Virus record (IMG/VR): IMGVR_UViG_3300035698_029839
Span: 62,001-126,000 of that record
Length of the DNA: 64,000 nucleotides
Reading direction: 5' to 3' (one strand)
Part shown: piece by piece, positions 7,817-61,829 of the stretch
Position numbering within the stretch: the first letter of the stretch is position 1
Layout of the letters: each line of letters begins with the position of its first letter
Translations under genes and position numbers: made by a program
Notes under the pieces: generated by a model
Database searches by the model: none
The model's input: the letters and a program-made list of their open reading frames with translations, nothing else
Told to the model about the DNA's origin: nothing

Positions 7817-8804
7817 AAAATGTAGGGTTTGTGGAGAGGAGAAGTTCTTGGATGATTTTTATTTTCGTAAGGACAGTGGGACGTATAGAGGAGATTGTAA
7901 AAAGTGCAATCTATCGGGAAGAAAAAAGTATAAGAAAAAATATAGAGAAGAGAATAGAGAAAAAATAAAAGAACAAAACAAGAAGTATAAAGAGAATCTC
8001 AGTGAAGAAAAAAAATTAAAACGAAAAGATTATTTAAAGACATATCAAGAAGAAAATAAAGAAAAAAGAAAAAAATATGCTAAAGGATATCGATCAGGAA
8101 ATAAGGAAAAAGTTAGAGAAGGGCAGAAAAGATATAGAGAAGAGAATAAAGAGAAAGTTGAAGAATGCAATAAAAAATATTATAATAATAACAGAGAAAA
8201 GATACTAGAAAAGAACAAAGAATATTATCAAAATAATAAAGAAAAATTTGCAGCTAATGATAAAAAGTGGAGAGAAAATAATAAAGAAAAAATGAAAGAA
8301 ATTTATAGGGTATACGAAGAAACCAATAAAGAAGAAATAGCAGAAAGAAAAAAAGAATATTATAAAAATAATAAAGATGTAATAGATAAAAGAAATAAAG
8401 AATATAGCAAGACTCCAGAAGGAATAAGACAACGCAGGGAGAGAGATAATAAGAGAAGGGAATGTCTTATGTTTAGGTTGAACGGGAATATGTCTAGTGG
8501 AATAAGGATTTCTTTAGAAAGAGATAATTTAAGTAAAAATGGTAGGCACTGGGAATATATAGTCGGATATACCACTAAAGAATTGAAATCTCATATAGAA
8601 AAATTATTTACTAAAGGTATGAATTGGGAAAATTATGGAGAGTGGCATATAGATCATATTACGCCAAAATCATTTTTTAAATATAAATCTACAGATGATG
8701 TAGAGTTCCGTTATTGTTGGTCTCTAAATAATTTGCAGCCTTTGTGGGCGGCAGATAATATAAGAAAAAGTGATAAAATTATTTTAAGGAAAATAGCAGT
8801 ATGA
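7806..8804 (+). CDS. HNH-type (endonuclease VII-like) homing endonuclease with N-terminal Zn finger and 15-aa charged repeats
   Basis: KKCRVCG...CKKC; about 10 Y.E.NKEK..E..K repeats; GMNWENYGEWHIDHITP and NLQPLWAADNIRKSDK motifs. Confidence 0.85.
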   Translation: MESKKCRVCGEEKFLDDFYFRKDSGTYRGDCKKCNLSGRKKYKKKYREENREKIKEQNKKYKENLSEEKKLKRKDYLKTYQEENKEKRKKYAKGYRSGNKEKVREGQKRYREENKEKVEECNKKYYNNNREKILEKNKEYYQNNKEKFAANDKKWRENNKEKMKEIYRVYEETNKEEIAERKKEYYKNNKDVIDKRNKEYSKTPEGIRQRRERDNKRRECLMFRLNGNMSSGIRISLERDNLSKNGRHWEYIVGYTTKELKSHIEKLFTKGMNWENYGEWHIDHITPKSFFKYKSTDDVEFRYCWSLNNLQPLWAADNIRKSDKIILRKIAV

Positions 8805-10753
8805 ATATCGTGCATTGCATAGAAAGCCTTGGTATCGGAGGAGCACAAAGCTGTGCTTTTGAGTTATACCACTCCATTAATACTTATTATCCTCAATATT
8901 CTCAGACATTTATATATACTCAAAACAATAGGATAGATAAACAATTTGTTGCTTCTTATGGAGTCCCTTGTAGGCTCTCAAAAAATAATGATTGGATATT
9001 AAAAAAAATTAATAAAATGGGTAACGTTATAGTTGTTTTTCACAAATTAGCCAGTTCTAGTTATAAATTATTAGATTTAATTAAATCTAGAACGAAAGCT
9101 CGTATCATGGTCATCAATCATACGCTTTACAAATCTTCATCATGGAAGAATACTAAGAGTGTAGATGTAATGGTTGCTGTTAGTAAGAATATGATGGAAG
9201 CTATGAAAAAATGGTATCCTAACATTAAAAATAAAGTTCAAATTTACAACTCTGTTTCGGCTTTTAGATATGATGCAGTTGCTCCAAGAAATGGTAATAA
9301 AAAAGATATTTTTTTAACAGGCCGTTGCAATCGCATTTGCGGCTGGAAGCACTCCAATGATTGGAACACATGGTGTAGGGATATGAAGCTACCTAAGAAA
9401 ATGGTTCATGAATATATAGGTAGTGGTATTGGTAGAGGAAATAGAAGTAGTAAGCCAAGAAGAGAAAAAGGTAGAAATGTTGTTATGATGATGGGGGGTA
9501 TTAGTGATTTTTCTCAAAAAGTTTCTATTATGAAAGATTGGGACTTATTCCTTTACGAGACAAAAAAAAATGAGGGGGTTAGTATGGCTATTTTAGAGTC
9601 TTTAGCATGCGGGGTACCCGTAATGTGTAGCAGCAACTATGGTAATCTAGAGATAATAGAGGAAGGAATAAATGGATATGTTTTTAAGGACAAGAGACAT
9701 GCTCAGAAGATCCTGACTCATCTAATTAATAACCCAAAAGAATTAAAAAAATTAAGAAGAACTACAAAGGAGCATTTCCTGGAAAAATTAGATTCAAAAT
9801 TTATGGCATATAGTTATATAAAAACTATGGAAGAAATGATGGGAAATAATTCAGATAAAATTAAAAAACCTGATCAGGATTTAACAATGATTGACAAATT
9901 AAAAGAAGATAGAGTTATGGAATCAAGTATACAATTAGAGAAGCCTATAGAGATAGTTGAAAAAGATATAACCAAAGAACCTAATAGAAAATTCTCTATT
10001 CTCACATCTAGTTACAATAAAGCAGAGTTTTTAAACGATTGGTCTAGATCTGTTCTTGCACAAAAATATAGACCATTAGAAGTTGTATTCGCTAATGATT
10101 GTTCTACCGATAGTACATTACAAATGGTGGAAAATTTTAAAAAGCAATGTGATGATAATGGGATTGAGTTTGTATTAGTGAATAATGAGCAAAGATTATA
10201 TTGCGGATCATCATATAAAAACTTACTCTCATATGCTACTGGCTCTTATTTCGGAGTATTAGATGCTGATGATATGTTGGTAGATGATTCTGTAGAGTAT
10301 ATAATGAAAAAGTATGATGAGTACAAAAATGTTTCTTGGATTTATACTCAATATGAAAATTGCGATATAAAAATGAAGCCTCGTAGAAAAGGTTTCTGTT
10401 GTTGTCCAGGGAAAGGTGAAACTTTGTTGGATCTTGGTAATAAAAGAGTTCATGGTTTTGGTCATTGGAGAACATTTTGTTATAGATTTCCAAGACCAGG
10501 TAAATTATTTGAAAAAAAATTGAAATGTGGTGTTGATAAGTTTATGGGGTATAGGCTGGAAGAGTTTGGTCAGGGTATGTTTGTTGATAGGGTTTGTTAT
10601 AAATATAGGCAACATCCTGTAGGATCTCTTAAATCAGTTTCTTCTACTAAAGAAGCTATTAATGTATGGGGAGATATTAAGAGAAGGGCGAGTGCTCGTA
10701 GAAAAAGATATAATTTAAGACCTTCTCAAATAATTAATTGCAAAAAAGTTTAG
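8801..10753 (+). CDS. Two-domain glycosyltransferase: GT4 (GT-B) fused to GT2 (GT-A)
   Basis: EGVSMAILESLACGVPV in the N-half; SILTSSYN, VFANDCSTD and VLDADD in the C-half. Confidence 0.9.
   Translation: MNIVHCIESLGIGGAQSCAFELYHSINTYYPQYSQTFIYTQNNRIDKQFVASYGVPCRLSKNNDWILKKINKMGNVIVVFHKLASSSYKLLDLIKSRTKARIMVINHTLYKSSSWKNTKSVDVMVAVSKNMMEAMKKWYPNIKNKVQIYNSVSAFRYDAVAPRNGNKKDIFLTGRCNRICGWKHSNDWNTWCRDMKLPKKMVHEYIGSGIGRGNRSSKPRREKGRNVVMMMGGISDFSQKVSIMKDWDLFLYETKKNEGVSMAILESLACGVPVMCSSNYGNLEIIEEGINGYVFKDKRHAQKILTHLINNPKELKKLRRTTKEHFLEKLDSKFMAYSYIKTMEEMMGNNSDKIKKPDQDLTMIDKLKEDRVMESSIQLEKPIEIVEKDITKEPNRKFSILTSSYNKAEFLNDWSRSVLAQKYRPLEVVFANDCSTDSTLQMVENFKKQCDDNGIEFVLVNNEQRLYCGSSYKNLLSYATGSYFGVLDADDMLVDDSVEYIMKKYDEYKNVSWIYTQYENCDIKMKPRRKGFCCCPGKGETLLDLGNKRVHGFGHWRTFCYRFPRPGKLFEKKLKCGVDKFMGYRLEEFGQGMFVDRVCYKYRQHPVGSLKSVSSTKEAINVWGDIKRRASARRKRYNLRPSQIINCKKV
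10256..10311 (+). repeat. 56-nt block identical to 11772-11827 (GT2 paralogues)
   Basis: Direct comparison; encodes VLDADDMLVDDSVEYIMK. Confidence 0.9.
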
Positions 10754-10762
10754 GAAAATAAT

Positions 10763-11494
10763 ATGTTTAATTTAACTAAGGAGCAATTGGTAGAAATTGC
10801 TAAATGTGACACACCTAGTATTGCTAATGCTCTTGAAATGTGTTGCGGCAGGTCTCGTCTAGAAGGTTTTAATAAGGAGGAAGCTCATGATTTTATGCCA
10901 GATATGGGTACTATGGTTGGTTATGCAGTAACATTTAAAGTTTGTGCTAGTAGACCTCCAACAAAAGAGGAAGAACTTGTTTTTGAAAAAACTCTCAGAC
11001 TTATAGAAGGATTTCCTAAACCAATAATTATGGTGATGGAAGATATTGACTCTCCAAATGAGATAGTTGGTTCTATGTGGGGGAGAGTTACTGCAATTAC
11101 TTATAAAGCTATGGGGGTTGTTGGAGTTATTGCTGATGGGGGTGTTCGAGATTTGCCTTCAATGGCAGAGGCGGGCTTTCATGCTCTCGCTAGACGTGTT
11201 TGTGTTTCTCATGGTTATGCTCATCATATTGCCAGTGGGGAACCTGTCAATGTATTTGGCACAGAAGTTAAAACAGGTAATCTTATTGCTGCTGATCAGC
11301 ATGGTTTTATTACTATTCCATATGATTGTGCTGATAGGGTAGCAGAAATAGCGGGCATAATCGACAAACTGGAAAGAGAGTATTTGACAGATTTGACAGA
11401 AAAACCTGGTTATAATGTAGATATAAGACTTGGTGGTTTTAAGATTTTTCAAGAAAAAATGATTGCTACAAAAAATAATTTTAAAAAGACATAG
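10763..11494 (+). CDS. RraA/HMG-aldolase family protein
   Basis: DTPSIANALE, GYAVT, DGGVRDLP and GNLIAADQHG motifs. Confidence 0.85.
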   Translation: MFNLTKEQLVEIAKCDTPSIANALEMCCGRSRLEGFNKEEAHDFMPDMGTMVGYAVTFKVCASRPPTKEEELVFEKTLRLIEGFPKPIIMVMEDIDSPNEIVGSMWGRVTAITYKAMGVVGVIADGGVRDLPSMAEAGFHALARRVCVSHGYAHHIASGEPVNVFGTEVKTGNLIAADQHGFITIPYDCADRVAEIAGIIDKLEREYLTDLTEKPGYNVDIRLGGFKIFQEKMIATKNNFKKT

Positions 11495-11495
11495 T

Positions 11496-12257
11496 ATGAA
11501 TAATAAATTTACTATTTTAACAGCTTCATCTAATAAGTATCCTTATTTAAAGGATTGGATGAATTCTATTCTTGTTCAGAAATACAGGCCATTAGAAGTT
11601 GTTATGGTTGATGATTGTTCTGATGATATGACTAGAAAACTTATTAAAAGATTTAGAAAAAGATTTGGAGAAAATGATATATCTTTTAATTATTTGAGAA
11701 ATAAAAAAAGATTACATTGTAGTAGTTCTTATAGAGTAGCTATAAAAACAGCTACGGGTGATTTTATGGGGGTATTAGATGCTGATGATATGTTGGTAGA
11801 TGATTCTGTAGAGTATATAATGAAAAAATATAATCAGTATGAATATATGGCTTGGATTTATACTCAATTCCAAATTTGCGATGCTCGTATGGGGTATATT
11901 AAGGATGGTTTTTGTAGATCACCAATACCGTGGGGATCTATGCTAGATTCTGGAGAAAAAAGAAAGCAGGTTTATTCTCATTGGAGAACATTTTCTAGGC
12001 GTTGTAGTGATTTGAGTAATTTATTGCCTAAAGGACTTAGATGCGCTGTTGATAAATATATGGGGTATAAATTAGAAGAATTGGGTAATGGGATGTTTAT
12101 TAATAGGGTGTGTTATAAATATAGACAAGGAGTTAAGAGAGGAGTAGTGGCTAAAGAAAGCACAAAGAATACTTGGAAAAAATTGGTTGCTAATTTGGTA
12201 GAGGATAGGAAAAAGAATAATATAAAGCCATTTCCAATTATAGAAGGAAAAGTATAA
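11496..12257 (+). CDS. GT2 glycosyltransferase, paralogue of the C-terminal domain of 8801
   Basis: VMVDDCSDD and VLDADD motifs; start moved to ATG 11496 by alignment with the paralogue. Confidence 0.88.
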   Translation: MNNKFTILTASSNKYPYLKDWMNSILVQKYRPLEVVMVDDCSDDMTRKLIKRFRKRFGENDISFNYLRNKKRLHCSSSYRVAIKTATGDFMGVLDADDMLVDDSVEYIMKKYNQYEYMAWIYTQFQICDARMGYIKDGFCRSPIPWGSMLDSGEKRKQVYSHWRTFSRRCSDLSNLLPKGLRCAVDKYMGYKLEELGNGMFINRVCYKYRQGVKRGVVAKESTKNTWKKLVANLVEDRKKNNIKPFPIIEGKV

Positions 12258-12928
12258 TGGTAAGAACAAAAAAACAGTGGCATAGATATTTTATAAAAGA
12301 AATTTCTATGATAGTTTCTAAATATGTTGATAAAAATAAAGATTTCTTTGTTGAGTGTGGTGTTAAGCAGGGATCATCATCTGTAATAATGGCATCTAAT
12401 TTAAACATTGATGGGTATTTATTTGATACTTGGCAAGGTTTTCCTCATTTCACAGATATTGATTTAGATTTAGGTATTAATAAAGCTAAAGATAGTATGG
12501 AATATAGAATAAGAGTAGCCAAAAATACATATAAAGAGTGTGTTGATAATCTTACTAGTCATGGAGTAATTGATTTATGTCAAATGATGCAGGGTGATAT
12601 TTTAAAAATAGTTCCTAAATTTATTGAGAATTTAGAAGATTTTAATATTTCTATGATGCATATAGATACAGATCTTTATGAACCTGCAAAAGTTTCTTTA
12701 GAATCTTTTTGGCCATATGTTAAAGAATCTGGGGTAGTTTATTTTCATGACTACGAAGATAAGAAATGGAGAGGAATAAAAAAAGTTGTCGATAAATTAG
12801 TAGAGATAGATAAAAATTTGTATTTTCATATTTTTGATGCAAATAAGTTATTTTCAGCATGTGTTGTGAAAGGAAAGAGTAATGCCAGTGAAGATATTTT
12901 TAATAATATAGTTAGTTTTGATCGATAA
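12257..12928 (+). CDS. TylF/MycF-family sugar O-methyltransferase
   Basis: VECGV, LFDTWQGFP, HIDTDLYEP and GVVYFHDY motifs. Confidence 0.85.
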   Translation: MVRTKKQWHRYFIKEISMIVSKYVDKNKDFFVECGVKQGSSSVIMASNLNIDGYLFDTWQGFPHFTDIDLDLGINKAKDSMEYRIRVAKNTYKECVDNLTSHGVIDLCQMMQGDILKIVPKFIENLEDFNISMMHIDTDLYEPAKVSLESFWPYVKESGVVYFHDYEDKKWRGIKKVVDKLVEIDKNLYFHIFDANKLFSACVVKGKSNASEDIFNNIVSFDR

Positions 12929-13874
12929 TATGAAACTTCTTATGATAATGAAAAAATTTAGTGGTGGTCCAAATATATTCAGGAGGAGACTTTCGAATAT
13001 TTTAGAAAAAAGAGTTAAAGAAACTGGTATAGAAATAGTTCATGATCCAAAAGGGAATTTTGATGCTGAATTAGCTTTTGTGAGAACCTTAACACAACAT
13101 AGGAAACCTACTATTTTAAGGGTTGATGGTTGTTATCTGGGAGGTGGTTATGAGGGTAAAAATCGTCTTTATAAAGAAGCTGCTAAAAATGCTAAGTTTA
13201 TAATTTATCAGTCTGAGTTTTCTCGTAGAATGTGTGAAAGTGTATGGGGTATTAATAAACCTAATGTTGTTATTCATAATGGAATTAATTTTGATGATTT
13301 AAAAGGAATAGATAAAGATCCTGCCATACCAGAGGGATCTTTTGTTGCTTCAGCTATATGGAGAAAAAATAAAAGACCTGTTTCTATGATCCAGGGTTTT
13401 ATAGATGCTGGAATAAAAAATCATTTTTATATTATAGGTGATACATATGGTATACCAGATAAATATTTGAATAGATTTAGAAAACATAGGAATATTCATT
13501 TTCCTGGTCCTTGTGATTTTGAAAGATCTATGTCTATTTTTAAGTCATGTGATTATTTGTTACATCTTGCACAAATAGATTCGTGTCCTAATGTTGTTAT
13601 TGAGGGACTTGCATCTGGTCTTAAAGTTTTATATAGTAATTTACAAGGAACAAAAGAATTTGTACCTCCTGAAAATGGGATTAAGATTAAAACTGATAAA
13701 TGGAAGTTTCAACCAATAGGTCTAGGTCAACATGATAGAATAAAACCAGGGTTAGTAGCAGATGGAATACATAGATTAATGCAATTAAAAGGAGAGAGGA
13801 TAATGTACCCACCAGAAATTAATATTAATTTAGTAGCAGATAGATATATAAAGGTGATAAAAGAAAATGTTTAA
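12918..13874 (+). CDS. GT4 glycosyltransferase
   Basis: IYQSEFS, VIHNGI and DSCPNVVIEGLASG motifs. Confidence 0.85.
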   Translation: MIDNMKLLMIMKKFSGGPNIFRRRLSNILEKRVKETGIEIVHDPKGNFDAELAFVRTLTQHRKPTILRVDGCYLGGGYEGKNRLYKEAAKNAKFIIYQSEFSRRMCESVWGINKPNVVIHNGINFDDLKGIDKDPAIPEGSFVASAIWRKNKRPVSMIQGFIDAGIKNHFYIIGDTYGIPDKYLNRFRKHRNIHFPGPCDFERSMSIFKSCDYLLHLAQIDSCPNVVIEGLASGLKVLYSNLQGTKEFVPPENGIKIKTDKWKFQPIGLGQHDRIKPGLVADGIHRLMQLKGERIMYPPEININLVADRYIKVIKENV

Positions 13875-14598
13875 AGTATCAGTAATAACAACTTTATATA
13901 ATTATAGTGATTATATTGTAGATTGTATCGAGTCTTTTCTTAATCAAAATTTTAAAGATTCAGAGATGATTATAGTTGATGATAATTCTTTAGACAATCC
14001 TTATCCTAATATTAAAAAATATAAATCTAATAGAATTAGATATATTAGATTAAATAAAAACATGGGATATTCTTTTGCTAAAAATATAGGAATTGAAAAT
14101 TGTAATTCTGATATTTTAGTAATGTTAGATGCTGATGATATGACTACAGAAAATGGTATATCTTTGAGGTATAATAAAATACAGGAAGGTTTTGATTTTG
14201 TTCACGGTCCAGTTTTAGATTTTACAGTTAAGAATGAGGAGATGAAAACAAAAGAGTCAAGACTTTGGCCAAAATGGAAAAAAAGTAAGAAAGATGCTTC
14301 TTGCTATAGGTTAATTCATGCTCAAAGTGTAATGCTTAAAAAGAATATACATAGAAAGATTGGCTTGTATGATGAAACTTTAAGAAGCAAAAGTGATAGA
14401 GAGATGTGGGCAAGAATATTAAATCATGGTTATAAAATGTTTTATGTGGAAGATTACGTGAGCTTGTATCGTAGACATAATAAGCAAATGCACAGATCCC
14501 CAGAAAAACTAAAAATAAATGACAAATTACAGAAGCATGTTTTAGCGTTGATAGAAAAAAGAAAAAAAGATTTGTCTGGTATTAAAATGTTAAAATAG
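13867..14598 (+). CDS. GT2 glycosyltransferase
   Basis: VSVITTLYNY, IIVDDNS and MLDADD motifs. Confidence 0.9.
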   Translation: MFKVSVITTLYNYSDYIVDCIESFLNQNFKDSEMIIVDDNSLDNPYPNIKKYKSNRIRYIRLNKNMGYSFAKNIGIENCNSDILVMLDADDMTTENGISLRYNKIQEGFDFVHGPVLDFTVKNEEMKTKESRLWPKWKKSKKDASCYRLIHAQSVMLKKNIHRKIGLYDETLRSKSDREMWARILNHGYKMFYVEDYVSLYRRHNKQMHRSPEKLKINDKLQKHVLALIEKRKKDLSGIKMLK

Positions 14599-14606: not shown

Positions 14607-14957
14607 GTGGATAAGCAAGGAAAAATATGGGGGTTTACTTCGGAAATATTTAATAAAAACAATGTAGAGATTCATAGAATTGTAGGAAATACTAATAGTC
14701 ATTGCTCTAAGCACAAACATGATCATAAGTTTAATATGTTTTTTGTGGAAAAAGGAATGATAATTATCAAAATATGGAAAAATGATTATGACCTTGTTGA
14801 TACAACTGTTCTAAATGAAGGACAATCATGTACTGTTCCTCCAGGGGAGTATCATCAATTTTTAGTTCAAGATAATTGTGTTGTTTATGAATTTTATTGG
14901 GTTGAAATAAGTTCAAAAGATATAGTTAGAGAAAATGTGGGAGGTATAAATGAGTAA
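14607..14957 (+). CDS. Cupin-domain protein (sugar isomerase-like)
   Basis: CSKHKH...FFVEKG and PPGEYHQF cupin motifs; GTG start with SD AGGAG. Confidence 0.8.
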   Translation: MDKQGKIWGFTSEIFNKNNVEIHRIVGNTNSHCSKHKHDHKFNMFFVEKGMIIIKIWKNDYDLVDTTVLNEGQSCTVPPGEYHQFLVQDNCVVYEFYWVEISSKDIVRENVGGINE

Positions 14958-15699
14958 AAAAGTAATATTAGTTCAAACTCCAGCATTCCTGTTTGAAGTA
15001 ATTCCCATGTTTTATGCGGAGACAAAAAAACTTGGATTTTTTGATAAAATTTATGTGGTTAGTGATTATGATGGAGATATATCTTTTGCTGAAGATGATT
15101 TTAAATTAATAAAATTAAATAAAGATTTACAATTTAGTTCTAACATACTATATGCATTAGATTTTATTGAAGAAGATATCATAACACTTTGTTGTGAAGA
15201 TCATATTTTTACTGATAAAAATAATTTAGAAAGATGGAGTGAGCATTTTGATTATTTTTATTTACATCCCGATATGGGTTTTTTAAGATTGTCTAATACT
15301 AAGAAGAAAGTTATTCCAGCTCCAGGACATGAAAAAGAAGATATATTTCCAATATCTACTAGATATAGATATCACATATCTTTACAGGTGGCTTTTTGGA
15401 GAAAAGAATATCTAAAAATAGCTTTGAATCCAGGCAATGATGCTGCAGATTTTGAAAGACGAGGAGCTAAATTAACTAGAAGAGCCTTTAGAGATGGGGA
15501 AATCAATATGAGATCTTATTGTGTTAAAGATTGTGTTGCACGTAGAACCAATTTTTATAAAGATGGTAAATATTATAGAAGACAATTTATTGATTATGCT
15601 CTTGCTCATAATATGTCATATAATAACAAGAAAAAAATAAAAACCAAACATGGTATTATAACATGCGCTGAGTACATAGAAAAAAATAAAAGGTTATAA
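14950..15699 (+). CDS. Putative GT-A-fold glycosyltransferase
   Basis: CCEDH (DxD-like) and SLQVAFWRKEYL...DFE motifs; island context. Confidence 0.55.
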   Translation: MSKKVILVQTPAFLFEVIPMFYAETKKLGFFDKIYVVSDYDGDISFAEDDFKLIKLNKDLQFSSNILYALDFIEEDIITLCCEDHIFTDKNNLERWSEHFDYFYLHPDMGFLRLSNTKKKVIPAPGHEKEDIFPISTRYRYHISLQVAFWRKEYLKIALNPGNDAADFERRGAKLTRRAFRDGEINMRSYCVKDCVARRTNFYKDGKYYRRQFIDYALAHNMSYNNKKKIKTKHGIITCAEYIEKNKRL

Positions 15700-15703
15700 A
15701 GTT

Positions 15704-16702
15704 ATGAATATACCTCCAGATAAGTATAAGAGTTTAATAGCTGTGGATAAGAAAAATAATGTTATACCTATTCCTAATAAGTTAATGAGGAAACAAAGAT
15801 GGAAAGAGGAGCAAGATAAAAGATTAACTCCTAATTCTCTTTGTATAGTTTGTAATTTTTCATATTATTACAAAGACAGAGGATGGTCAAATAATGTTAA
15901 AGCAATTTGTCATCCCTTTAGAGAATATCAGCAACCTGTGGGAGATAGGGAATTATATTTATTTTCTGAATCTGATATGTGCGATACCTTATGGATGGAC
16001 GATATTTTATTGTTGAAAAATAGAGATAATTATGAATATGATTTTTTTATTTTTACTATAGATAGTGGACAGGGAGTTAAGTGTAAGGGGGCATATTTTT
16101 TACCTCTAATATTTGAAGTGGCTAAGGAATTAGGAATGAGAGGTTTGGTATTAGATTATTATCCTCGTCAAAGACCTATTTGTGATGGTATTGGGAAATG
16201 GGATATTCAGGTAAGAGAGGTGAGATCATCTTTAAAAAAAATGGATAATATAAATATCAAAAGAGGATGGATTAGCCAAAATAAAATAAATAAATTGATG
16301 AGCCATTGCAAATTTGTAATATTTCCAAATAATAGAGATGCTAGTCCAAGAACAATACCAGAAACATTATTGAGAGGTAAACCTATTATGGTTAATAAAA
16401 ACATTTTAGGAGGATGGAAATATTGCAATGATATTAATGGAATATTGTATGATGGTGCTTTTGATGTGGAACAGTTGAAAAATAATAAGCAATATTATTA
16501 CGATGAAATTAAAAAATCTTTGATTGAGATGAGTAATAAAAAAAGTGATGCTAGTAATATTAAAAAAAATTATTTAGAAAAATATGGATTTTCTAATACG
16601 TCAAAGAGGCTAGCGTCTATTATTAATAAAATGGAAGGTCATAAAAAGTATAAATATGTGGCTTATACAGATTTTAAAAATTATTTAAAAGCTTTTGTGT
16701 AG
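15704..16702 (+). CDS. GT-B (GT4-like) glycosyltransferase
   Basis: FVIFPNNRDASPRTIPETLLRGKPIMVNKNILGGWKY acceptor/donor motif. Confidence 0.7.
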   Translation: MNIPPDKYKSLIAVDKKNNVIPIPNKLMRKQRWKEEQDKRLTPNSLCIVCNFSYYYKDRGWSNNVKAICHPFREYQQPVGDRELYLFSESDMCDTLWMDDILLLKNRDNYEYDFFIFTIDSGQGVKCKGAYFLPLIFEVAKELGMRGLVLDYYPRQRPICDGIGKWDIQVREVRSSLKKMDNINIKRGWISQNKINKLMSHCKFVIFPNNRDASPRTIPETLLRGKPIMVNKNILGGWKYCNDINGILYDGAFDVEQLKNNKQYYYDEIKKSLIEMSNKKSDASNIKKNYLEKYGFSNTSKRLASIINKMEGHKKYKYVAYTDFKNYLKAFV

Positions 16703-16712
16703 AGGTGAAGTT

Positions 16713-17207: not shown

Positions 17208-17211
17208 AAAT

Positions 17212-44551: not shown

Positions 44552-44552
44552 T

Positions 44553-45227: not shown

Positions 45228-45231
45228 TAAT

Positions 45232-45834: not shown

Positions 45835-45837
45835 TTT

Positions 45838-50000: not shown

Positions 50001-50010
50001 GGATATATCT

Positions 50011-53043: not shown

Positions 53044-53092
53044 AAATAAGAATGACATAATATATTATATATAAATTGTAATAAGAAATTAA

Positions 53093-53710
53093 ATGAAAAA
53101 AATTAATTTAACTAATCAAGATAAAAAAGAAATTTTAGAAGTAGTAAAACTTACTAATAAAAAACATAGAAAAGATCCATATCAGGCAATTGGGGATATA
53201 AAAGGAGTTAGAAACACAGATTATAGATGCGAGTTTATGAAACTGCCAAAAGATTTCAAAGGGAAATCGGTATTAGATATAGGATGTAATTTAGGAGCTA
53301 TGTGTTATATTGCTAAAAGTAGAGGTGCGGGTCGCGTTGTCGGTATCGATTACAATACAGTTCTTTTAGATATGTCATCTAATGTGTTTTCAAGACATAA
53401 TTACGATATATCTCTTATTAGTTATGATTTAAATACTCAAGGGTATACTCCTTTGACAGAAATTTTAGGAAAAGATAAATTTGATTATATATTTGCGTTA
53501 TCAATTTATCATCATATTAACGATAAAAATGTATTATGGAATATTATTAATAATTATTGTTGCGATACTTGCTGGTTTGAAGGCCATAAAAGAAACAAGA
53601 GGGAAGAATTACAAAAAGTTTTAACACTGAATATTAAAGCAAAAAAAATAGATTTTGTAGGCAATATAGATGACCATGTTCGTAGATCAATTTTTAAATG
53701 TGTATTTTAA
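53093..53710 (+). CDS. Class I methyltransferase
   Basis: GKSVLDIGCNLG, VVGID and FDYIFALSIYHHI motifs. Confidence 0.85.
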   Translation: MKKINLTNQDKKEILEVVKLTNKKHRKDPYQAIGDIKGVRNTDYRCEFMKLPKDFKGKSVLDIGCNLGAMCYIAKSRGAGRVVGIDYNTVLLDMSSNVFSRHNYDISLISYDLNTQGYTPLTEILGKDKFDYIFALSIYHHINDKNVLWNIINNYCCDTCWFEGHKRNKREELQKVLTLNIKAKKIDFVGNIDDHVRRSIFKCVF

Positions 53711-53722
53711 AAGGAAAAGAAT

Positions 53723-54349
53723 ATGGTAAAAGGAGAAACTTCTGAAGAAAGAAAAAAGAGAAAATTAGCGAAAAAAAGAGAAAATAGAAGACAGAGGAAA
53801 GAAAGAAGAATACAGAGAGGAGAACGTCATAATAATATTTTAAGAGAAATAAAAGATATAGATGTAGAATTAATATATTATCCATATCGTACTTGGGATG
53901 AACCGTATGTAAAATATTGGAGACAAAATAATGGGCACCTATTAAGATTTATTAATTGCCCATGGGCATTATTTATTGAAGATTATGTGAGATTGGGAGA
54001 TAAGATATGGAGAGATTTAGACAATCATATTTTTATTCAATGGGAACGTGATATATTCTTAACAGCTAATAGGAAGGTAGATAGGCTGGAGAGAGAAAAG
54101 ATTGAAAAAGGTACTCATTCAATAAAAGCAGCTTTAAGGTTGATAAAATTGGCAAACAGTATACAAAAGTATGGATATTGTAAGGGGGTACATGCTGTAG
54201 ATAAGAATCTTATTAATGTTGTAGCGAATTACACATCTCCACATGGAGGTAGTGGATATAGAGTATTATGGGGGAATCATAGAGCAGCGGTATGTGCTGG
54301 TCTGGGGATGAAAAAAATAAAAGTGAGATGTTGGGATTCTTATTCTTAA
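53723..54349 (+). CDS. ParB/Srx-like domain protein with basic N-terminal extension
   Basis: NSIQKYGY...YRVLWGNHRAAVCAGLGMKKIKV motif. Confidence 0.62.
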   Translation: MVKGETSEERKKRKLAKKRENRRQRKERRIQRGERHNNILREIKDIDVELIYYPYRTWDEPYVKYWRQNNGHLLRFINCPWALFIEDYVRLGDKIWRDLDNHIFIQWERDIFLTANRKVDRLEREKIEKGTHSIKAALRLIKLANSIQKYGYCKGVHAVDKNLINVVANYTSPHGGSGYRVLWGNHRAAVCAGLGMKKIKVRCWDSYS

Positions 54350-54406: not shown

Positions 54407-55480
54407 ATGAAAAAAGTTTTTGTTTCTGGATGTTATGATATTATTCATGGAGGACACATCCAGTTTTTTAAGGATGCTAAAAAATATGGAGATTTTTTAA
54501 TTGTTAATATAGCTTCTGATGAAGTTATTAAATTAGCTAAAAATAAAAGACCTTCATTACCAGTTGAGCATAGGATATCAATTTTAGAATCATTAGAAAT
54601 AGTGGATAAAGTTTATGTTAGTAGCGATGTTGATAGTGTGTTAGATTTTAAAACTAATTTTATAAATGAGAAACCTGATTTACTAGTGTTTTCTGGAGAT
54701 GAAAAAAACAAAGATATTAAGAAAGAGTTTTGTAAAGAAGTTGGATCAGAGTGTGTCCAGATAGATAAGATTAATCCTTTTAATTATGATTCATCAATTT
54801 CTACTTCTAAAATAATTAATCTGGTTAAAAGACCAAAGAAAATACCTTTAAGAGTAGATTTTGCTGGCGGTTGGTTAGATGTCCCTTCTTTATCAAGACA
54901 AAATGCTTTTATAGTTAATTGTACAATTAATAAATTTATGGATGAAGATTGTGAGTTCGATCCAGGAGCTGGTGTAGGAGGATCTGCTGCTTACTGGCTT
55001 TATAAGGGACAGAATACATTAGAAAGTGAGTTAAAGAATGGAGCTGGATGGCAAGATCCTGCTGTTATTACAGAAACAGGATTATGTGTGTGGAGGTCTG
55101 GTATGATTCCTATTTTGGAATTAAAAATAAATCCTGATTTCCTAAATAATAAAATGGCTCTTTTATATGATAGAACTCCTCATGATACTCCCTCACTAAG
55201 AGAAATAGAAAGAGATTATAAATTGATTGAAGAAGCAGGATCTAAAGCTTATGAGGCAGTTATTAACAAAAATTTATTTCTTCTTAATGATGCGGTCGAT
55301 ATATCTTATAAAGCTCAATTAAAAGAGGGAATGAATAAATTAAAATCGTATGGAGAGATGAGTAAAAAATATTGTGGTTCAGGATGGGGAGGATGTTCTT
55401 TATATGTTTTTTATAATCATGAAAGAGTTCCTGACAATATGATAAAAATACAACCATATATAAGAAATATTGACGAATAG
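54407..55480 (+). CDS. Cytidylyltransferase (TagD/RfaE-like) fused to a GHMP sugar-kinase domain
   Basis: GCYDIIHGGH and SISTSKI, then PLRVDFAGGWLD, PGAGVGGSAA, GWQD and CGSGWGG. Confidence 0.85.
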   Translation: MKKVFVSGCYDIIHGGHIQFFKDAKKYGDFLIVNIASDEVIKLAKNKRPSLPVEHRISILESLEIVDKVYVSSDVDSVLDFKTNFINEKPDLLVFSGDEKNKDIKKEFCKEVGSECVQIDKINPFNYDSSISTSKIINLVKRPKKIPLRVDFAGGWLDVPSLSRQNAFIVNCTINKFMDEDCEFDPGAGVGGSAAYWLYKGQNTLESELKNGAGWQDPAVITETGLCVWRSGMIPILELKINPDFLNNKMALLYDRTPHDTPSLREIERDYKLIEEAGSKAYEAVINKNLFLLNDAVDISYKAQLKEGMNKLKSYGEMSKKYCGSGWGGCSLYVFYNHERVPDNMIKIQPYIRNIDE

Positions 55481-55509: not shown

Positions 55510-56328
55510 ATGACCAAAGTAGGAATTATAGGTTATGGAATTATAGGAAAAGCAGTATTAAAAATGTTTAAGGACAAAGTAGAACTTTGTGTTCATGATA
55601 TAAATATTTCTACTGATGATAAAATATATTTAAATATGGTTGGAATAGAATATTCTGATAAGGAAGAAATTAATAGTTGTGATATTGCTTTTGTTTGTGT
55701 CCCTACCCCACATAATAAGTATGATGGCTTGGATATGTCTATTGTTGAAAGTGTTATAAAAGAGTTTAATCCAGGAATGTTTGTTATATGTTCTGCTTTA
55801 CAACCTGGCACAGCAGATATTTTAATGAATAAATATGGAAAGAAAATAGTTGTACAGCCAGAATATTTTGGAGAGACAACGAATCATCCTCTTACTAATT
55901 TATCTCAAAATCCATTTATGATTTTAGGCGGTAAAAATGAAGATGTTGATGAAGTCATAAAACTTTATCAAAAAGTTTATAATGCTAATATCAGAATTAG
56001 AAAGGTGACAGCTTTAGAAGCTGAAGTGATTAAACTTTCTGAGAATAGAGCTATAGCATATAAGGTTGCTCAATGTCAAGAATTGTATGATGCTTGTAAA
56101 AATTCTAAGGTAGATTATGAAACTATTAGACAAGCTGTTTATGGGGATGACCCAAGATTTAATTTATGGTGGACTTTTGTTTATGAAGATAACAGAGGTA
56201 TGAATAGTAAGTGTATTCCTAAGGATGTTTACGGGTGGTATAGGTGGGCAGATGATTCAGGAGTTAATCCACGATTAACTGAAGCCTTATTAGATTATAA
56301 CCACAGTTTAGTAAAGAAAGATGAGTAA
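55510..56328 (+). CDS. UDP-glucose/GDP-mannose dehydrogenase family protein (short, intein-free)
   Basis: GIIGYGIIG, CVPTP and divergent catalytic GMNSKCIPKD; lacks the C-terminal UDP-binding domain. Confidence 0.82.
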   Translation: MTKVGIIGYGIIGKAVLKMFKDKVELCVHDINISTDDKIYLNMVGIEYSDKEEINSCDIAFVCVPTPHNKYDGLDMSIVESVIKEFNPGMFVICSALQPGTADILMNKYGKKIVVQPEYFGETTNHPLTNLSQNPFMILGGKNEDVDEVIKLYQKVYNANIRIRKVTALEAEVIKLSENRAIAYKVAQCQELYDACKNSKVDYETIRQAVYGDDPRFNLWWTFVYEDNRGMNSKCIPKDVYGWYRWADDSGVNPRLTEALLDYNHSLVKKDE

Positions 56329-58364: not shown

Positions 58365-58523
58365 TGCTTTAGTAAAGATATTAATTCTTTAATTGATACC
58401 ATGGAAAAGGAAGGTCTTGATCCATTGGTTTTAAAAGCAGTATGGGAACAAAATAAAAGAGTTAGAAAAAAATGGGACTGGGCCGATGAGTCTTCAGCCG
58501 TTTTAGGGGAGGAAAAGTCATGA
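58221..58523 (+). CDS. ugd: Split intein C-fragment (48 aa) plus dehydrogenase C-extein (52 aa)
   Basis: GTG start with SD AGGAG at 58209-58213; block F KVYNLELE; block G GIVTHN, then CFSKDINSL. Confidence 0.92.
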   Translation: MKKIKINKIKKESYKGKVYNLELETENFDTDGDDLFWIEQETGIVTHNCFSKDINSLIDTMEKEGLDPLVLKAVWEQNKRVRKKWDWADESSAVLGEEKS

Positions 58524-59251
58524 GTGTTGTAAGGGGGGTTATATTAGCAGGTGGACATGGGAAGAGACTTTATCCTATGACTAAGGTTATAAATAAGCAT
58601 TTATTGAATGTTTATAATAAACCCATGATTTATTACCCGATAGAGACTATGATTAATGCTGGGATTGATCAAATTATGATAGTAACAGGGGGAAATAATG
58701 CAGGTAGTTTTTTGGAGCTTATTGGGAATGGGGAAGAGTTCGGATTAAAAGAAATGCACTATTCTTATCAAAAAGGAGCAGGAGGTATAGCGGAAGCTTT
58801 ATCTTTAGCAGAGAATTTTACGGCTGGAGATAAGTTTGTAGTTATTTTAGGAGATAATATACTAGAAAAAAGTATTAAGCCTTATGTGGATAATTTTAAA
58901 TGTCAACAAGGAGGAGCAAAAATACTTTTAACTAAGTCTATGACTCCAGAACGTTTTGGGGTAGCGGAGATTGACGATAATAATAATGTTACTTGTATAG
59001 TTGAGAAGCCACGAGAACCTAAAAGTGACAGTATAGTTATTGGCGTATATATGTATGATGGAGAAGTTTTCGAAGCTATTAAACAACAACAACGTTCTGA
59101 CAGAGGAGAATTAGAGATTACTGATGTGAATAATTATTATATAGAAAAGAGTAAGCTAACAAGTGATTTTATTGATGGATGGTGGACAGACGCTGGGACT
59201 ATTCCTTCTCTATTTAAAGCCAATGCGTTACTAAAGGATAATAATGAGTAA
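58520..59251 (+). CDS. rmlA: Glucose-1-phosphate thymidylyltransferase (short form)
   Basis: ILAGGHGKRLYPMT, EKP, SDRGELEITD and WWTDAGT motifs. Confidence 0.93.
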   Translation: MSVVRGVILAGGHGKRLYPMTKVINKHLLNVYNKPMIYYPIETMINAGIDQIMIVTGGNNAGSFLELIGNGEEFGLKEMHYSYQKGAGGIAEALSLAENFTAGDKFVVILGDNILEKSIKPYVDNFKCQQGGAKILLTKSMTPERFGVAEIDDNNNVTCIVEKPREPKSDSIVIGVYMYDGEVFEAIKQQQRSDRGELEITDVNNYYIEKSKLTSDFIDGWWTDAGTIPSLFKANALLKDNNE

Positions 59252-60068
59252 TATAATTTTTGGAAACGGTTTTATAGGTAATATTTTAAATAATAAGTTA
59301 GATGATTATGAATTATCAGATTTAAACCCATTATTTTATGGAACTCTTTGTAAGGCATTAGATGTACATAAACCAGAAGTTATTATTAATTGTATTGGTA
59401 AAACAGGAAGACCCAATATAGATTGGTGCGAGAATAATAAAGAAGATACAATATTATCCAATATCGCCGTACCATCAATACTTGCATCTGAATGTTCTAA
59501 AAGAGGTATATATTTTGTCCATATGGGAAGCGGTTGTATTTATTCTGATAGGGACGGAGAGAATAATTTTTCTGAAGATGATGAACCAAATTTCTATAAA
59601 TATCAGACTTACGCAAGAACTAAAATATTAGCTGAAAAAATTGTTAAAAATGTACCCTCTTTGCAGGTGCGTATTAGAATGCCTATTTGTTCTTATCCTC
59701 ATGATAGAAATTTAATAACAAAATTATCAAAGTATGAAAAAGTAATTGATATTAAAAATTCTATGACAGTTATAGAGGATTTTTTACCTGTGTTTAAGAC
59801 ACTTGTAGATAATAGGGCTACGGGTATATATAATGTTGTGAATGAAGGGGCTATATCTGCTTATGAGATTATGAAGTTGTATGCAGAAATTGTAGATTTA
59901 TCATATAGGGTGTCTTTATTAAGTAAAGAAGAGTTAAATAGGATAACAGTTGGTGAAAGATCCAATTGTATTATTTTGTCGGAAAAGATTAAAAAATATG
60001 GAATATCTATGCCCAATATAAGAGAATCTATAGAGAAAGTTCTTTATGAATATAAGGAAAATTTATGA
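59244..60068 (+). CDS. rmlD: NRS/ER-type NDP-4-keto-6-deoxyglucose 3,5-epimerase/4-reductase (RmlD-like)
   Basis: GNGFIG, GKTGRPNIDWCE, GSGCIY, RIRMPI and RSNC motifs. Confidence 0.85.
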   Translation: MSNIIFGNGFIGNILNNKLDDYELSDLNPLFYGTLCKALDVHKPEVIINCIGKTGRPNIDWCENNKEDTILSNIAVPSILASECSKRGIYFVHMGSGCIYSDRDGENNFSEDDEPNFYKYQTYARTKILAEKIVKNVPSLQVRIRMPICSYPHDRNLITKLSKYEKVIDIKNSMTVIEDFLPVFKTLVDNRATGIYNVVNEGAISAYEIMKLYAEIVDLSYRVSLLSKEELNRITVGERSNCIILSEKIKKYGISMPNIRESIEKVLYEYKENL

Positions 60069-61009
60069 ATATATTAGTTACGGGCGGTGCGGGTTTTATA
60101 GGCTCTAATTTTATAGAAATACTTTTAGAAAAAACAAATCATAATATTGTAGTTTATGATTGTTTAACATATGCTGGTAATATAAATAATATTAAAGAAT
60201 TTATAGAAGATCGAAGATTAACTTTTGTAGAAGGCGATATACGAAATGGAAGTGTTGTTGATTGTTCTATAAAGAGTACTGATGTGGTTGTTAACTTTGC
60301 AGCGGAGACTCATGTTGATAATAGTATTTCATCTTGTAAGGATTTCTTAACTACCAATATTATTGGGACTGCTGTGTTGGCTGATTCAGCTATAAAATAT
60401 AAGGTTAAGAAATTTGTTCAAATATCTACAGATGAGGTTTATGGAGCTATTAATTACCCACATTCTTCTATAGAAACAGATGTATTAAAACCTCAGAATC
60501 CATATAGTGCTTCTAAGGCTTCTGCTGATATGTTGTTACTTTCTTATTATAACACTTATAAATTTCCAGTTGTTATAACAAGGTGCACTAATAATTATGG
60601 GAAGAAACAATATCCTGAGAAAATTATACCTTTATTTATATCAAATTTAATGAATGATAAAAAGGTTCCTGTCTATGGAGATGGGCTACAAATAAGAGAC
60701 TGGATACATGTAAGTGATCATTGCAATGCTATTCTTAATGTTATGGAAAAAGGAAGGGTTGGGGAGGTATATAATATAGGTTCTTCCAATGAAATTAAAA
60801 ATATTGATTTAACAAAAATTTTAATAAGTAAAATGGAAAAAGATGAAACATCTATAAAATATGTAGAAGATCGTCTTGGACACGATAAAAGATATTCTTT
60901 AAATACCGAAAAAATAAAAAATGAGCTAGAATGGAAATCTGTAGTTAATTTTGAAGAAGGAATTGATTCTACTGTCAAATGGTACAAAGATGCATTTCAA
61001 CAGAAATAA
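60065..61009 (+). CDS. rmlB: dTDP-glucose 4,6-dehydratase
   Basis: GGAGFIGSN, TYAGN, AAETHVDNS, STDEVYG, PYSASK and DRLGHDKRY motifs. Confidence 0.95.
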   Translation: MNILVTGGAGFIGSNFIEILLEKTNHNIVVYDCLTYAGNINNIKEFIEDRRLTFVEGDIRNGSVVDCSIKSTDVVVNFAAETHVDNSISSCKDFLTTNIIGTAVLADSAIKYKVKKFVQISTDEVYGAINYPHSSIETDVLKPQNPYSASKASADMLLLSYYNTYKFPVVITRCTNNYGKKQYPEKIIPLFISNLMNDKKVPVYGDGLQIRDWIHVSDHCNAILNVMEKGRVGEVYNIGSSNEIKNIDLTKILISKMEKDETSIKYVEDRLGHDKRYSLNTEKIKNELEWKSVVNFEEGIDSTVKWYKDAFQQK

Positions 61010-61829
61010 AATAAAACAAAATAAATTAAAGATTTCTCCTAGGGGTGGAAAAAAAAAGAAAATAAAAACTGCTAGCTCAAATAAGATTGTTCGCCCTGTC
61101 AAGAAGTCTAAAAAGAAAAATAGAAAATTAAAAATAACTTCTACATCTGGTTCTAGTGCTTTAAATATTAAAAAATTCGGGGATAAATCTATTTATAAGC
61201 CTATGGATGAATGGAAAAATTTATTAGAAGGACATGTGGTATTTATACTAGGTAATTCTCCTGGGATATCTAAACAAAATTTAGATATTTTGAAACCTTA
61301 TTTTACGATAGGTATTAATAGAATATTTTATATTTATACTTCTACTATCTTAATGTGGCAAGATATTCAAATGTGGAACAGTGAAAAGAATAAAATAGCC
61401 AATAATAAATCATTAAGAATATGTAATACTGCTAGCGATCCTAGAAAATTTTTCTTAAATTTCAAAGTTAAGGGTGGAAGTTTTAAATTTGGTAAGAATC
61501 CTTCTGTTCTATATGGAACTGGAAATACGACAGCGCTTGCTGCTCAATTAGCTGTTAGTTTGGGTTGTTCAGATATAGTTTTATTGGGAACAGACTGTAA
61601 GTATCAGGGGGGTAAAACTGATTTTTATGGAAAGAATAAAGATCACAAATCATATACATTAAAAATGTGTGATACAGCCATGAAATGGATAAAAAATGAT
61701 TGTCCCATTCCAGTTCATAATTGTAGTAGTAATAAGTTATTACCAGAAGAGAATCTAATAGACGTTATAAAAAAATTAAGACCAGAAAAAATGAGTAGAA
61801 AAGAATATATAAGGAAATTCAAAATATAA
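60951..61829 (+). CDS. Maf/DUF115 (Cst-II-like) protein 4 with Lys-rich N-terminal extension (start may be 60990)
   Basis: VFILGNSPGI, FTIGINRI and GCSDIVLLGTDC motifs. Confidence 0.68.
   Translation: MKKELILLSNGTKMHFNRNKIKQNKLKISPRGGKKKKIKTASSNKIVRPVKKSKKKNRKLKITSTSGSSALNIKKFGDKSIYKPMDEWKNLLEGHVVFILGNSPGISKQNLDILKPYFTIGINRIFYIYTSTILMWQDIQMWNSEKNKIANNKSLRICNTASDPRKFFLNFKVKGGSFKFGKNPSVLYGTGNTTALAAQLAVSLGCSDIVLLGTDCKYQGGKTDFYGKNKDHKSYTLKMCDTAMKWIKNDCPIPVHNCSSNKLLPEENLIDVIKKLRPEKMSRKEYIRKFKI

What the first reader, a model, noticed from the sequence alone, without database searches (positions are those of the whole stretch)
8801..61829. ~53 kb all-soluble glycosylation island in a phage-like genome: candidate autonomous virion-glycosylation system
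Seen: about 60 contiguous, mostly stop/start-overlapping genes. They include about 22 GT-like, 4 Maf-like and about 17 MTase-like genes, nucleotide-sugar synthesis (rmlA/B/D, two UDP-sugar dehydrogenases, NeuA/NeuB, KdsB), aldolases and radical SAMs. I found no protein with an obvious transmembrane segment and no Wzx, Wzy, Wzz, Wzm/Wzt, Kps export or priming phosphoglycosyl transferase. Established: cellular O-antigen, capsule and S-layer loci normally carry or neighbour such membrane components, while Mimiviridae glycosylate fibrils with soluble enzymes and some mycobacteriophages glycosylate capsids with a few GTs. Inference: a large phage builds a complex, methylated, ulosonic-acid-containing glycan on its virion or another cytoplasmic target, at a scale closer to giant eukaryotic viruses than to described phages.
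Basis: partly seen in the sequence, partly recalled or inferred. Interest (0 to 1): 0.92.

Follow-up and report, generated by a model that had tools for sequence, protein, structure and literature searches.

The report
Huge-phage soluble glycan-building gene island
About a fifth of this 298-kb contig from a huge Antarctic-lake phage is one run of soluble sugar-making, sugar-transferring and methylating enzymes with no membrane export genes. Related huge phages carry the same island, so the clade probably builds a complex acidic glycan inside the infected cell, most plausibly on its own particles.

Summary
The island is real. Window 8801-61829 holds 68 tiling ORFs, 65 on one strand and mostly overlapping. 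None has a convincing transmembrane segment, and there is no Wzx, Wzy, ABC exporter or priming transferase.

- 11 glycosyltransferase ORFs
- 13 methyltransferases
- 3 weak MptE/Maf-like ORFs
- RmlA, RmlB and RmlD
- 2 UDP-sugar dehydrogenases
- 2 NeuB
- NeuA-like and KdsB-like cytidylyltransferases
- 2 pyruvate aldolases and 2 radical SAM enzymes
- 21 ORFs with no family hit

Structure models add a NeuC-like 2-epimerase fold (two paralogues) and a sialyltransferase-like fold. Sugar genes also lie upstream, giving about 70 kb in all.

The parent is a 297,710-bp IMG/VR contig from Ace Lake. Its genes have Shine-Dalgarno sites. The flanks carry homing endonucleases, inteins, a Tad5 anti-defence gene and replication genes.

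The island is collinear in relatives on 220-548 kb contigs (59-79% identity, 27-44% in a distant one), with a variable 3' sugar cassette. A terminase sits on the 548-kb relative. I did not find one on the parent contig.

Virion glycosylation is the most plausible target but is untested. Remodelling of host surface glycans is the main rival. I found no published description.

The parts
3249..4121 (-). Outlying NeuB-like synthase, upstream of the contiguous block
   Evidence: 27-29% identity to the two island NeuB ORFs
8801..10753 (+). 650-aa fusion of a GT1/GT4-type and a GT2-type glycosyltransferase
   Evidence: Pfam Glycos_transf_1 and Glycos_transf_2. PDB hits to chondroitin synthase, GalT1, TarS and Gtf1
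10763..11494 (+). RraA-like class II pyruvate aldolase
   Evidence: Pfam RraA-like, E=3e-16
11463..14598 (+). GT2, TylF/Methyltransf_24 sugar O-methyltransferase, GT4, GT2
   Evidence: Pfam. Same order in the 327-kb relative
14607..14957 (+). Small cupin, candidate NDP-sugar isomerase or epimerase
   Evidence: Weak Pfam Cupin_2 hit. Conserved in the relative
14950..18509 (+). Five soluble ORFs with no family hit, including a tandem duplicate pair (16695 and 17185, 60% identity)
   Evidence: Homologues of g15704 in the distant island L059
18552..20704 (+). Class I methyltransferase, 224-aa unknown, GT1-like
   Evidence: Pfam. g19790 is 64% identical to its counterpart in L058
20701..24765 (+). 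Duplicated module: Methyltransf_24 + 159-aa ORF + 379-aa GT-B protein, then Methyltransf_24 + 386-aa paralogue
   Evidence: Paralogy 62% and 43%. The 379-aa model has pLDDT 93.7 and its best folds are UDP-GlcNAc 2-epimerases including NeuC
24756..26272 (+). Methyltransferase and a conserved 326-aa unknown
   Evidence: Pfam. 75-79% identity in L058. g25292 travels with the ulosonic-acid module in L140 and L141
26267..28866 (-). Minus-strand trio: Methyltransf_24, radical SAM with SPASM domain, 306-aa unknown
   Evidence: Pfam
28950..32203 (+). 2-hydroxyacid dehydrogenase, CMP-sugar synthetase (CTP_transf_3), two NeuB synthases (75% identical, no SAF domain)
   Evidence: Pfam. PDB PseI, SpsE and NeuB, E=1e-22
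32176..33012 (+). 278-aa unknown
   Evidence: No Pfam hit
33023..35784 (+). GT2, MptE/Maf-like, methyltransferase, GT1
   Evidence: Pfam. The same four genes in the same order at 66-71% identity in L058, and three of them (not the GT2) at about 40% in L059
35788..41067 (+). GT2-like paralogue pair (35788 and 38009) and five conserved unknowns
   Evidence: g36635 and g37345 have homologues in L058; g37345, g38766 and g39736 have them in L059
41064..43327 (+). GT1/GT4 glycosyltransferase followed by two unknowns
   Evidence: Pfam Glycos_transf_1, E=4e-20
43346..46542 (+). Methyltransferase, unknown, MptE/Maf-like, Methyltransf_24, methyltransferase
   Evidence: Pfam
46564..50673 (+). KdsB-like CMP-ulosonate synthetase, radical SAM, 2-hydroxyacid dehydrogenase, HpcH/HpaI pyruvate aldolase, FkbM methyltransferase
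   Evidence: Pfam. PDB KdsB, E=1e-33
50670..54349 (+). GT1-like, weak methyltransferase, formyltransferase, methyltransferase, unknown
   Evidence: Pfam
54407..55480 (+). TagD-like cytidylyltransferase with an extra C-terminal part
   Evidence: Pfam CTP_transf_like. PDB glycerol-3-phosphate cytidylyltransferase, E=1e-12
55510..56328 (+). UDP-sugar dehydrogenase-like (N-terminal and central domains)
   Evidence: Pfam. 74% identity in L008
56321..58523 (+). Second UDP-sugar dehydrogenase-like gene, split by a homing-endonuclease ORF (57457-58224)
   Evidence: Both pieces align to one intact 282-aa homologue. Rfam detects no intron
58520..61009 (+). RmlA, RmlD-like reductase, RmlB 4,6-dehydratase
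   Evidence: Pfam. Relatives carry other sugar genes at this position
60951..61829 (+). MptE/Maf-like protein with a sialyltransferase-like fold, closing the island
   Evidence: Pfam 26.8 bits, below the cut-off. Foldseek best hits are Cst-II, ST8SiaIII and ST6GalNAc2. 107 homologues

Best explanation
The island is a vertically inherited glycan factory of a clade of huge tailed phages that infect bacteria, and it works in the host cytoplasm.

Encoded steps (shown by family or fold):
- Activated sugars: a dTDP-6-deoxyhexose branch (RmlA, RmlB, RmlD), UDP-sugar dehydrogenases, a TagD-like CDP-alcohol branch, and two or three ulosonic-acid branches. The ulosonic branches combine NeuC-like epimerases, NeuB synthases or pyruvate aldolases, and NeuA-like or KdsB-like CMP-activating enzymes.
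- Assembly: at least 11 GT2 and GT4-type transferases plus 3-5 sialyltransferase-fold proteins.
- Tailoring: about 13 methyltransferases, a formyltransferase and radical SAM enzymes.

Inferred: nothing in the island or its flanks can prime on a lipid, flip, polymerise or export. The glycan is therefore most likely built sugar by sugar directly on a protein made during infection, most plausibly an exposed virion protein. A conserved core of transferases would lay down a common backbone. The swappable 3' sugar cassette would vary the outer residues.
For: - Gene content and solubility.
- NeuC-like fold.
- Sialyltransferase-like fold.
- KdsB, NeuB and TagD identities.
- Viral and bacterial-host signals: the parent is an IMG/VR contig of 297,710 bp. 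Shine-Dalgarno motifs precede 64% of starts against 14% background. The flanks carry peptide deformylase, HNH and EndoVII endonucleases, three inteins, Tad5, RecA, DnaG and UvrD.
- In 95 kb of the parent contig, no ribosomal protein turned up among the ORFs I scanned. In the 64-kb window there is no tRNA and no Rfam match.
- A relative carries DNMK, ThyX and a T4-type RNA ligase.
- A terminase large subunit lies on the 548-kb contig that also carries three island markers.
- Collinear islands occur in relatives on 220-548 kb contigs, with differing 3' cassettes.
- The closing MptE-like gene has no relative in 185,579 reference genomes.
Against: - No acceptor and no structural gene was found in the 95 kb of the parent contig that I read.
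- The terminase scan did not return the parent contig, so the contig is probably an incomplete genome.
- Most glycosyltransferases of ordinary O-antigen loci are also soluble, so host lipid-linked intermediates cannot be excluded.
- The closing MptE-like gene family also occurs in other huge phages beside sigma-70, Macro, DHH and ribonucleotide reductase genes, away from any sugar genes in the 10 kb on either side.
- No aminotransferase or acetyltransferase for Pse or Leg synthesis is present.
- Twenty-one ORFs are unassigned.
Confidence: 0.5

Rival explanations
1. Host-surface remodelling. The phage enzymes extend or replace host undecaprenyl-linked LPS, capsule or S-layer glycan intermediates, or host flagellin glycans. 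They borrow the host's priming, flipping and ligation machinery, for example to block superinfection.
For: This is how sugar and GT clusters in jumbo cyanophages have been read (PMC7824862; PMC9123017). Soluble GTs normally act at the inner membrane face. The variable 3' cassette resembles O-antigen diversity.
Against: - About 70 genes with no carrier-linked or export step.
- The transferase core stays collinear down to 27-44% identity. That fits a phage-encoded acceptor better than changing host glycans.
- Host flippases and ligases are usually selective for their own glycans (my own knowledge).
Confidence: 0.28
2. Another cytoplasmic product: a free or small-molecule-linked methylated oligosaccharide, or hypermodification of phage DNA or RNA with sugars.
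For: - Phage GTs can build glycans on DNA (Pyle 2024, as cited).
- The neighbourhood is rich in nucleotide-metabolism genes.
- TylF and FkbM methyltransferases and radical SAM enzymes are typical of natural-product tailoring.
Against: - No hydroxymethylase or base-modifying enzyme lies next to the island.
- Ulosonic acids and sialyltransferase-fold enzymes are not known on nucleic acids.
- No scaffold synthase (PKS or NRPS) is present.
Confidence: 0.1
3. Not viral: a cellular flagellin-type glycosylation island, or a piece of another large extrachromosomal element, wrongly filed as a virus.
For: - The Campylobacter flagella locus is a 50-gene region (cj1293-cj1342) with seven maf genes, two nonulosonic-acid pathways and the flagellin genes; that it lacks export genes is my own knowledge.
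- No terminase was found on the parent contig.
- Some relatives are binned in MAGs.
Against: - No flagellin, ribosomal or tRNA gene in the region read.
- Homing endonucleases, inteins and Tad5 flank the island.
- Runs of small ORFs, DNMK and an RNA ligase occur in a relative.
- A terminase is linked to island markers on the 548-kb contig. On the 461-kb contig it is linked only to the flank synteny.
Confidence: 0.05

Closest known systems
Giant-virus glycosylation machinery (Mimivirus fibril clusters, chlorovirus capsid glycans; my own knowledge)
   Same: Virus-encoded nucleotide-sugar synthesis plus many soluble GTs and sugar methyltransferases. Clade-specific sugar cassettes. No dependence on membrane pathways.
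   Different: The host is a bacterium and the genes are in operon-like, overlapping order. The island is larger than the Mimivirus clusters I know of. It adds ulosonic-acid branches and sialyltransferase-fold enzymes. Attachment to the virion is not shown here.
Mycobacteriophage virion glycosylation (Freeman 2023, as cited)
   Same: A phage-encoded cytoplasmic system that decorates capsid and tail-tube proteins.
   Different: Those phages use a few GTs placed next to structural genes. Here about 70 genes sit between replication modules, and no acceptor has been identified.
Campylobacter-type flagellin glycosylation island
   Same: A region of comparable size (50 genes) with several nonulosonic-acid pathways and multiple PF01973 paralogues; it acts on a protein in the cytoplasm and lacks export genes (my own knowledge).
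   Different: No flagellin gene is present and the genome context is viral. The MptE-like proteins are short (224-292 aa) and lack the flanking regions of full-length Maf proteins. Many GT2, GT4 and methyltransferase genes imply an oligosaccharide rather than single sugars.
Sugar and GT clusters of jumbo cyanophages (PMC7824862)
   Same: A polymorphic phage cluster of NDP-sugar enzymes and paralogous GTs.
   Different: Those clusters have 8-12 genes and are read as host polysaccharide modification. This island has 68 or more genes and stays collinear across deep divergence.

Membership tests
Wzx/Wzy- or ABC-transporter-dependent polysaccharide locus | Initiating phosphoglycosyl transferase (WbaP/PglC or WecA type) | tested here: not met
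   No such Pfam family in the 68 island ORFs. No unassigned ORF has a membrane or re-entrant helix.
Wzx/Wzy- or ABC-transporter-dependent polysaccharide locus | Flippase, polymerase, chain-length regulator or ABC exporter | tested here: not met
   No multi-pass membrane ORF in contig 40.7-135.5 kb. The method detects a 4-TM control protein.
Maf-type flagellin glycosylation island | PF01973 (MptE/Maf) glycosyltransferase paralogues | tested here: inconclusive
   Three window ORFs score 22.8-27.5 bits against a cut-off of 34.6. One upstream ORF scores 44.3. A PDB profile search did not find Maf. The fold is sialyltransferase-like.
Maf-type flagellin glycosylation island | Adjacent flagellin acceptor genes in a cellular genome | tested here: not met
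   No flagellin family hit in the window or flanks, and the context is viral.
NeuC-NeuB-NeuA type nonulosonic acid pathway | PEP-condensing synthase and CMP-activating enzyme | tested here: met
   NeuB E=1e-48 to 1e-50 and CTP_transf_3. PDB PseI and NeuB.
NeuC-NeuB-NeuA type nonulosonic acid pathway | Hydrolysing NDP-sugar 2-epimerase | tested here: inconclusive
   No Pfam Epimerase_2 hit. The 379-aa and 386-aa paralogues model as a GT-B fold closest to UDP-GlcNAc 2-epimerases, TM 0.60-0.68. Activity is untested.
Tailed phage (Caudoviricetes) genome | Terminase large subunit and structural genes on the same molecule | tested here: inconclusive
   None in the parent's 95 kb that I read, and the parent was not returned by the terminase scan. 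A terminase is present on the 548-kb relative that carries island markers, and on the 461-kb relative that shares the flank synteny.
Virus-encoded virion glycosylation | Glycan demonstrated on virion proteins | not testable with these tools
   Needs purified particles and glycoproteomics.
Phage DNA glycosylation | Base hydroxymethylase or an equivalent handle next to the GTs | tested here: not met
   None among the Pfam hits in the regions read. The rest of the genome was not seen.

The most novel reading that the evidence does not exclude
A widespread clade of huge aquatic phages coats its own virions with a complex, heavily methylated glycan rich in ulosonic acids. The glycan is made entirely by phage enzymes, on the scale of giant eukaryotic viruses. 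A conserved backbone and a swappable outer-sugar cassette would act in adsorption or in evasion of host and grazer recognition.
Probability: 0.4. Interest if true: 0.85.

Novelty: new variant of a known kind. Interest (0 to 1): 0.72.

Why it matters
Phage glycobiology is currently known from DNA glucosylation, serotype-converting prophages and a few glycosylated mycobacteriophages. This clade of 220-548 kb phages spends roughly a fifth of its genome on glycan synthesis. That would extend giant-virus-style autonomous glycosylation to bacterial viruses.

It would also supply new enzymes: short sialyltransferase-fold transferases, a divergent NeuC-like family and possible aldolase routes to ulosonic acids. 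It offers a testable reason for genome gigantism. And it would affect how marine and lake phage particles are recognised, adsorbed and counted.

Tried and rejected
- Megablast of the left flank against GenBank phages found nothing.
- Exact-protein look-ups of the window's edge genes gave only 1-2 kb ENA contigs.
- I walked 46 kb downstream in a relative and 21 kb upstream in the parent looking for capsid or terminase genes. Only replication, nucleotide and RNA-repair genes turned up. PHROGs gave no hit for ten large unknowns there.
- A eukaryotic giant virus was considered because of the 29% GC, topoisomerase IA and inteins. I rejected it on Shine-Dalgarno sites, overlapping co-directional genes and peptide deformylase.
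- An archaeal host was suggested by an Asgard MAG label. I judged it unlikely given peptide deformylase, RecA, DnaG, a bacterial-type clamp loader and Tad5.
- 'Moraphages' (PMC12619734) were checked as a possible identity, and nothing links them to this clade.
- The split dehydrogenase was tested for a group I intron, and Rfam found none.
- No Ser/Thr-rich candidate acceptor lies in the window.
- PDB sequence searches for the in-island MptE-like ORFs were empty.
Full report
**1. What is in the sequence**

The window is 29% GC with a steady positive GC skew, no tRNA and no Rfam match. Between 8801 and 61829 I count 68 tiling ORFs, 65 on the + strand. Across the window, 48 of 83 same-strand junctions overlap.

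A hydropathy scan finds no credible transmembrane segment in any tiling ORF. The same scan detects a 4-TM control protein from another locus.

Pfam scans of every island ORF give:
- GT2 or GT1/GT4 domains in ten ORFs, plus one paralogue (35788). One of the ten is a 650-aa two-domain fusion.
- 13 methyltransferases of TylF/Methyltransf_24, FkbM and class I types.
- 3 MptE/Maf-like ORFs, all below the gathering score.
- 2 NeuB and 2 CTP_transf_3. One of the latter is clearly KdsB-like against solved structures.
- A TagD-like cytidylyltransferase.
- 2 D-2-hydroxyacid dehydrogenases.
- HpcH and RraA pyruvate aldolases.
- 2 radical SAM enzymes, a formyltransferase and a cupin.
- 2 UDP-sugar dehydrogenases.
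- RmlA, RmlD and RmlB.

Twenty-one ORFs have no hit. No priming transferase, flippase, polymerase or exporter family appears.

**2. Two unknown families resolved by structure**

The 379-aa and 386-aa paralogues (21832 and 23605) have more than 150 unnamed homologues. They model with pLDDT 93.7 as a GT-B fold. The best matches are UDP-GlcNAc 2-epimerases, including NeuC. With NeuB and a CMP-synthetase this would complete a three-step nonulosonic-acid route.

The closing MptE-like ORF (60951) models with pLDDT 78.8. It matches the sialyltransferases Cst-II, ST8SiaIII and ST6GalNAc2 better than pyrophosphokinases.

**3. Boundaries**

Sugar genes also lie outside the stated range. There is a NeuB-like ORF at 3249-4121 (-). 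Upstream of the window there are two more MptE-like ORFs, one above the Pfam cut-off, and a third CTP_transf_3. The sugar-related region therefore spans about 70 kb, or 24% of the contig. It is interrupted by unrelated genes.

**4. What genome this is**

The window is positions 62001-126000 of IMGVR_UViG_3300035698_029839, which is 297,710 bp long. The sample is an Ace Lake, Antarctica metagenome.

Shine-Dalgarno motifs precede 64% of starts, against 14% at random positions.

The flanks hold:
- HNH and EndoVII homing endonucleases, NADAR, peptide deformylase and a QueE-like enzyme.
- RecA, DnaG primase, UvrD with an intein, and a Tad5 anti-Thoeris homologue.
- A topoisomerase IA with an intein.

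A relative continues downstream with DNMK, a clamp loader, ThyX and a T4-type RNA ligase.

I did not find structural genes in the 95 kb of the parent that I could read. A terminase profile scan did not return the parent contig. However, the 548-kb contig IMGVR_UViG_3300033145_003233 carries homologues of three island markers. The same contig carries a 632-aa protein that matches phage terminase large subunits. The 461-kb contig that shares the left-flank synteny also has this terminase.

Shorter contigs from the same Ace Lake sample carry the terminase at 75-76% identity, and the two I measured have 30% GC. The parent contig is therefore probably an incomplete genome of a tailed phage with a bacterial host.

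**5. Conservation**

The island is a trait of the lineage.
- In the phage represented by contigs of 327-351 kb, genes from 11463 to 37345 recur in the same order. Those I could align are 45-79% identical, most of them 59-79%. The relative lacks the window's tandem duplications and has a few extra or missing tailoring genes.
- A distant 483-kb relative keeps a collinear GT, methyltransferase, MptE-like and NeuB island at 27-44% identity, with a canonical NeuC-NeuB-NeuA trio.
- The last 10 kb before the closing MptE-like gene differs between relatives. Here it holds the formyltransferase, the TagD-like enzyme and RmlABD. Elsewhere it holds several epimerase/dehydratases, RmlC and B12 radical SAM enzymes, or LicD, an acetyltransferase, NeuC and a kinase.
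- Downstream, the 85-aa gene, RlaP and the topoisomerase are conserved.
- None of these island segments encodes a multi-pass membrane protein.
- The closing gene's family has no relative in 185,579 reference genomes.

**6. Mechanism**

Shown: the enzyme families and folds, their solubility, and the absence of carrier or export genes.

Inferred:
- Several ulosonic acids are made and CMP-activated. The HpcH aldolase next to the KdsB-like enzyme may be an aldolase route to a Kdo-like acid, since no KdsA is present.
- These acids are transferred by the sialyltransferase-fold proteins.
- Neutral sugars are added by the GT2 and GT4 enzymes, and the product is heavily methylated.
- A lipid-free, export-free pathway fits direct protein glycosylation in the cytoplasm.
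- A transferase core that stays conserved while hosts presumably change fits an acceptor encoded by the phage.

This gives virion glycosylation the edge, at about 0.5. Host-envelope remodelling stays a serious rival, because published readings of smaller phage clusters take that view.

One caution on the closing gene. In other huge phages its family lies beside sigma-70, Macro, DHH and ribonucleotide reductase genes, away from any sugar genes in the 10 kb on either side. It may have a wider role than the island.

**7. Novelty**

GenBank phages rarely carry these genes: 3 of 50,697 records for NeuB and 3 for the MptE-like protein. A 2026 review of jumbo phages does not mention glycosylation. 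Full-text searches that paired huge or jumbo phages with nonulosonic-acid terms found no paper holding both.

The closest known systems are giant-virus glycosylation clusters, mycobacteriophage virion glycosylation, the Campylobacter flagella locus and the small cyanophage sugar clusters. I rate this a new variant of a known kind. It is interesting mainly for its scale, its conservation across a clade and its chemistry.

Noticed in passing
window 56321-58523: A UDP-sugar dehydrogenase-like gene is split by a homing-endonuclease ORF (57457-58224). The two pieces align to residues 1-238 and 234-280 of an intact 282-aa homologue. Rfam detects no group I intron.
   Followed up: partly
L006:11696-15307; L017:6100-9081; L017:3543-5429: Three intein-bearing genes lie within 25 kb of the island: topoisomerase IA (with a LAGLIDADG domain), a UvrD helicase and a CxxCxxCC protein.
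   Followed up: no
L007:4320-4913: A homologue of the anti-Thoeris protein Tad5 (Pfam E=8e-32) sits among the upstream sugar genes.
   Followed up: no
L022-L057, e.g. L022:6777-20438: In other huge IMG/VR phages the closing gene's family sits in a conserved block of 4-TM protein, sigma-70, Macro, HNH, MptE-like, DHH, AAA and ribonucleotide reductase, with the terminase a few genes on. No sugar genes appear within the 10 kb read on either side.
   Followed up: partly
L140, L141; proteins P0058, P0132, P0198: Low-GC contigs with the ulosonic-acid module are binned as Pelagibacter and Pacearchaeota MAGs. One of them also carries a run of small phage-like ORFs. Proteins of the 548-kb phage contig are labelled Asgardarchaeia in NCBI. 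This is probably phage DNA mis-binned into MAGs.
   Followed up: partly
window 16695-17706, 20701-24765, 30593-32203: Recent tandem duplications inside the island: 60%, 62% with 43%, and 75% identity. The 327-351 kb relative lacks them.
   Followed up: yes
window 30593-32203: The NeuB ORFs are 264-270 aa and lack the C-terminal SAF domain of the 349-aa solved enzymes. A relative also carries a NeuB with the SAF domain.
   Followed up: no
IMG/VR contigs 3300035698_029912, _027542, _027145: Contigs from the same sample, two of them measured at about 30% GC, carry the clade's terminase, while the 298-kb parent contig was not returned by the terminase scan. The parent is likely an incomplete genome.
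   Followed up: partly
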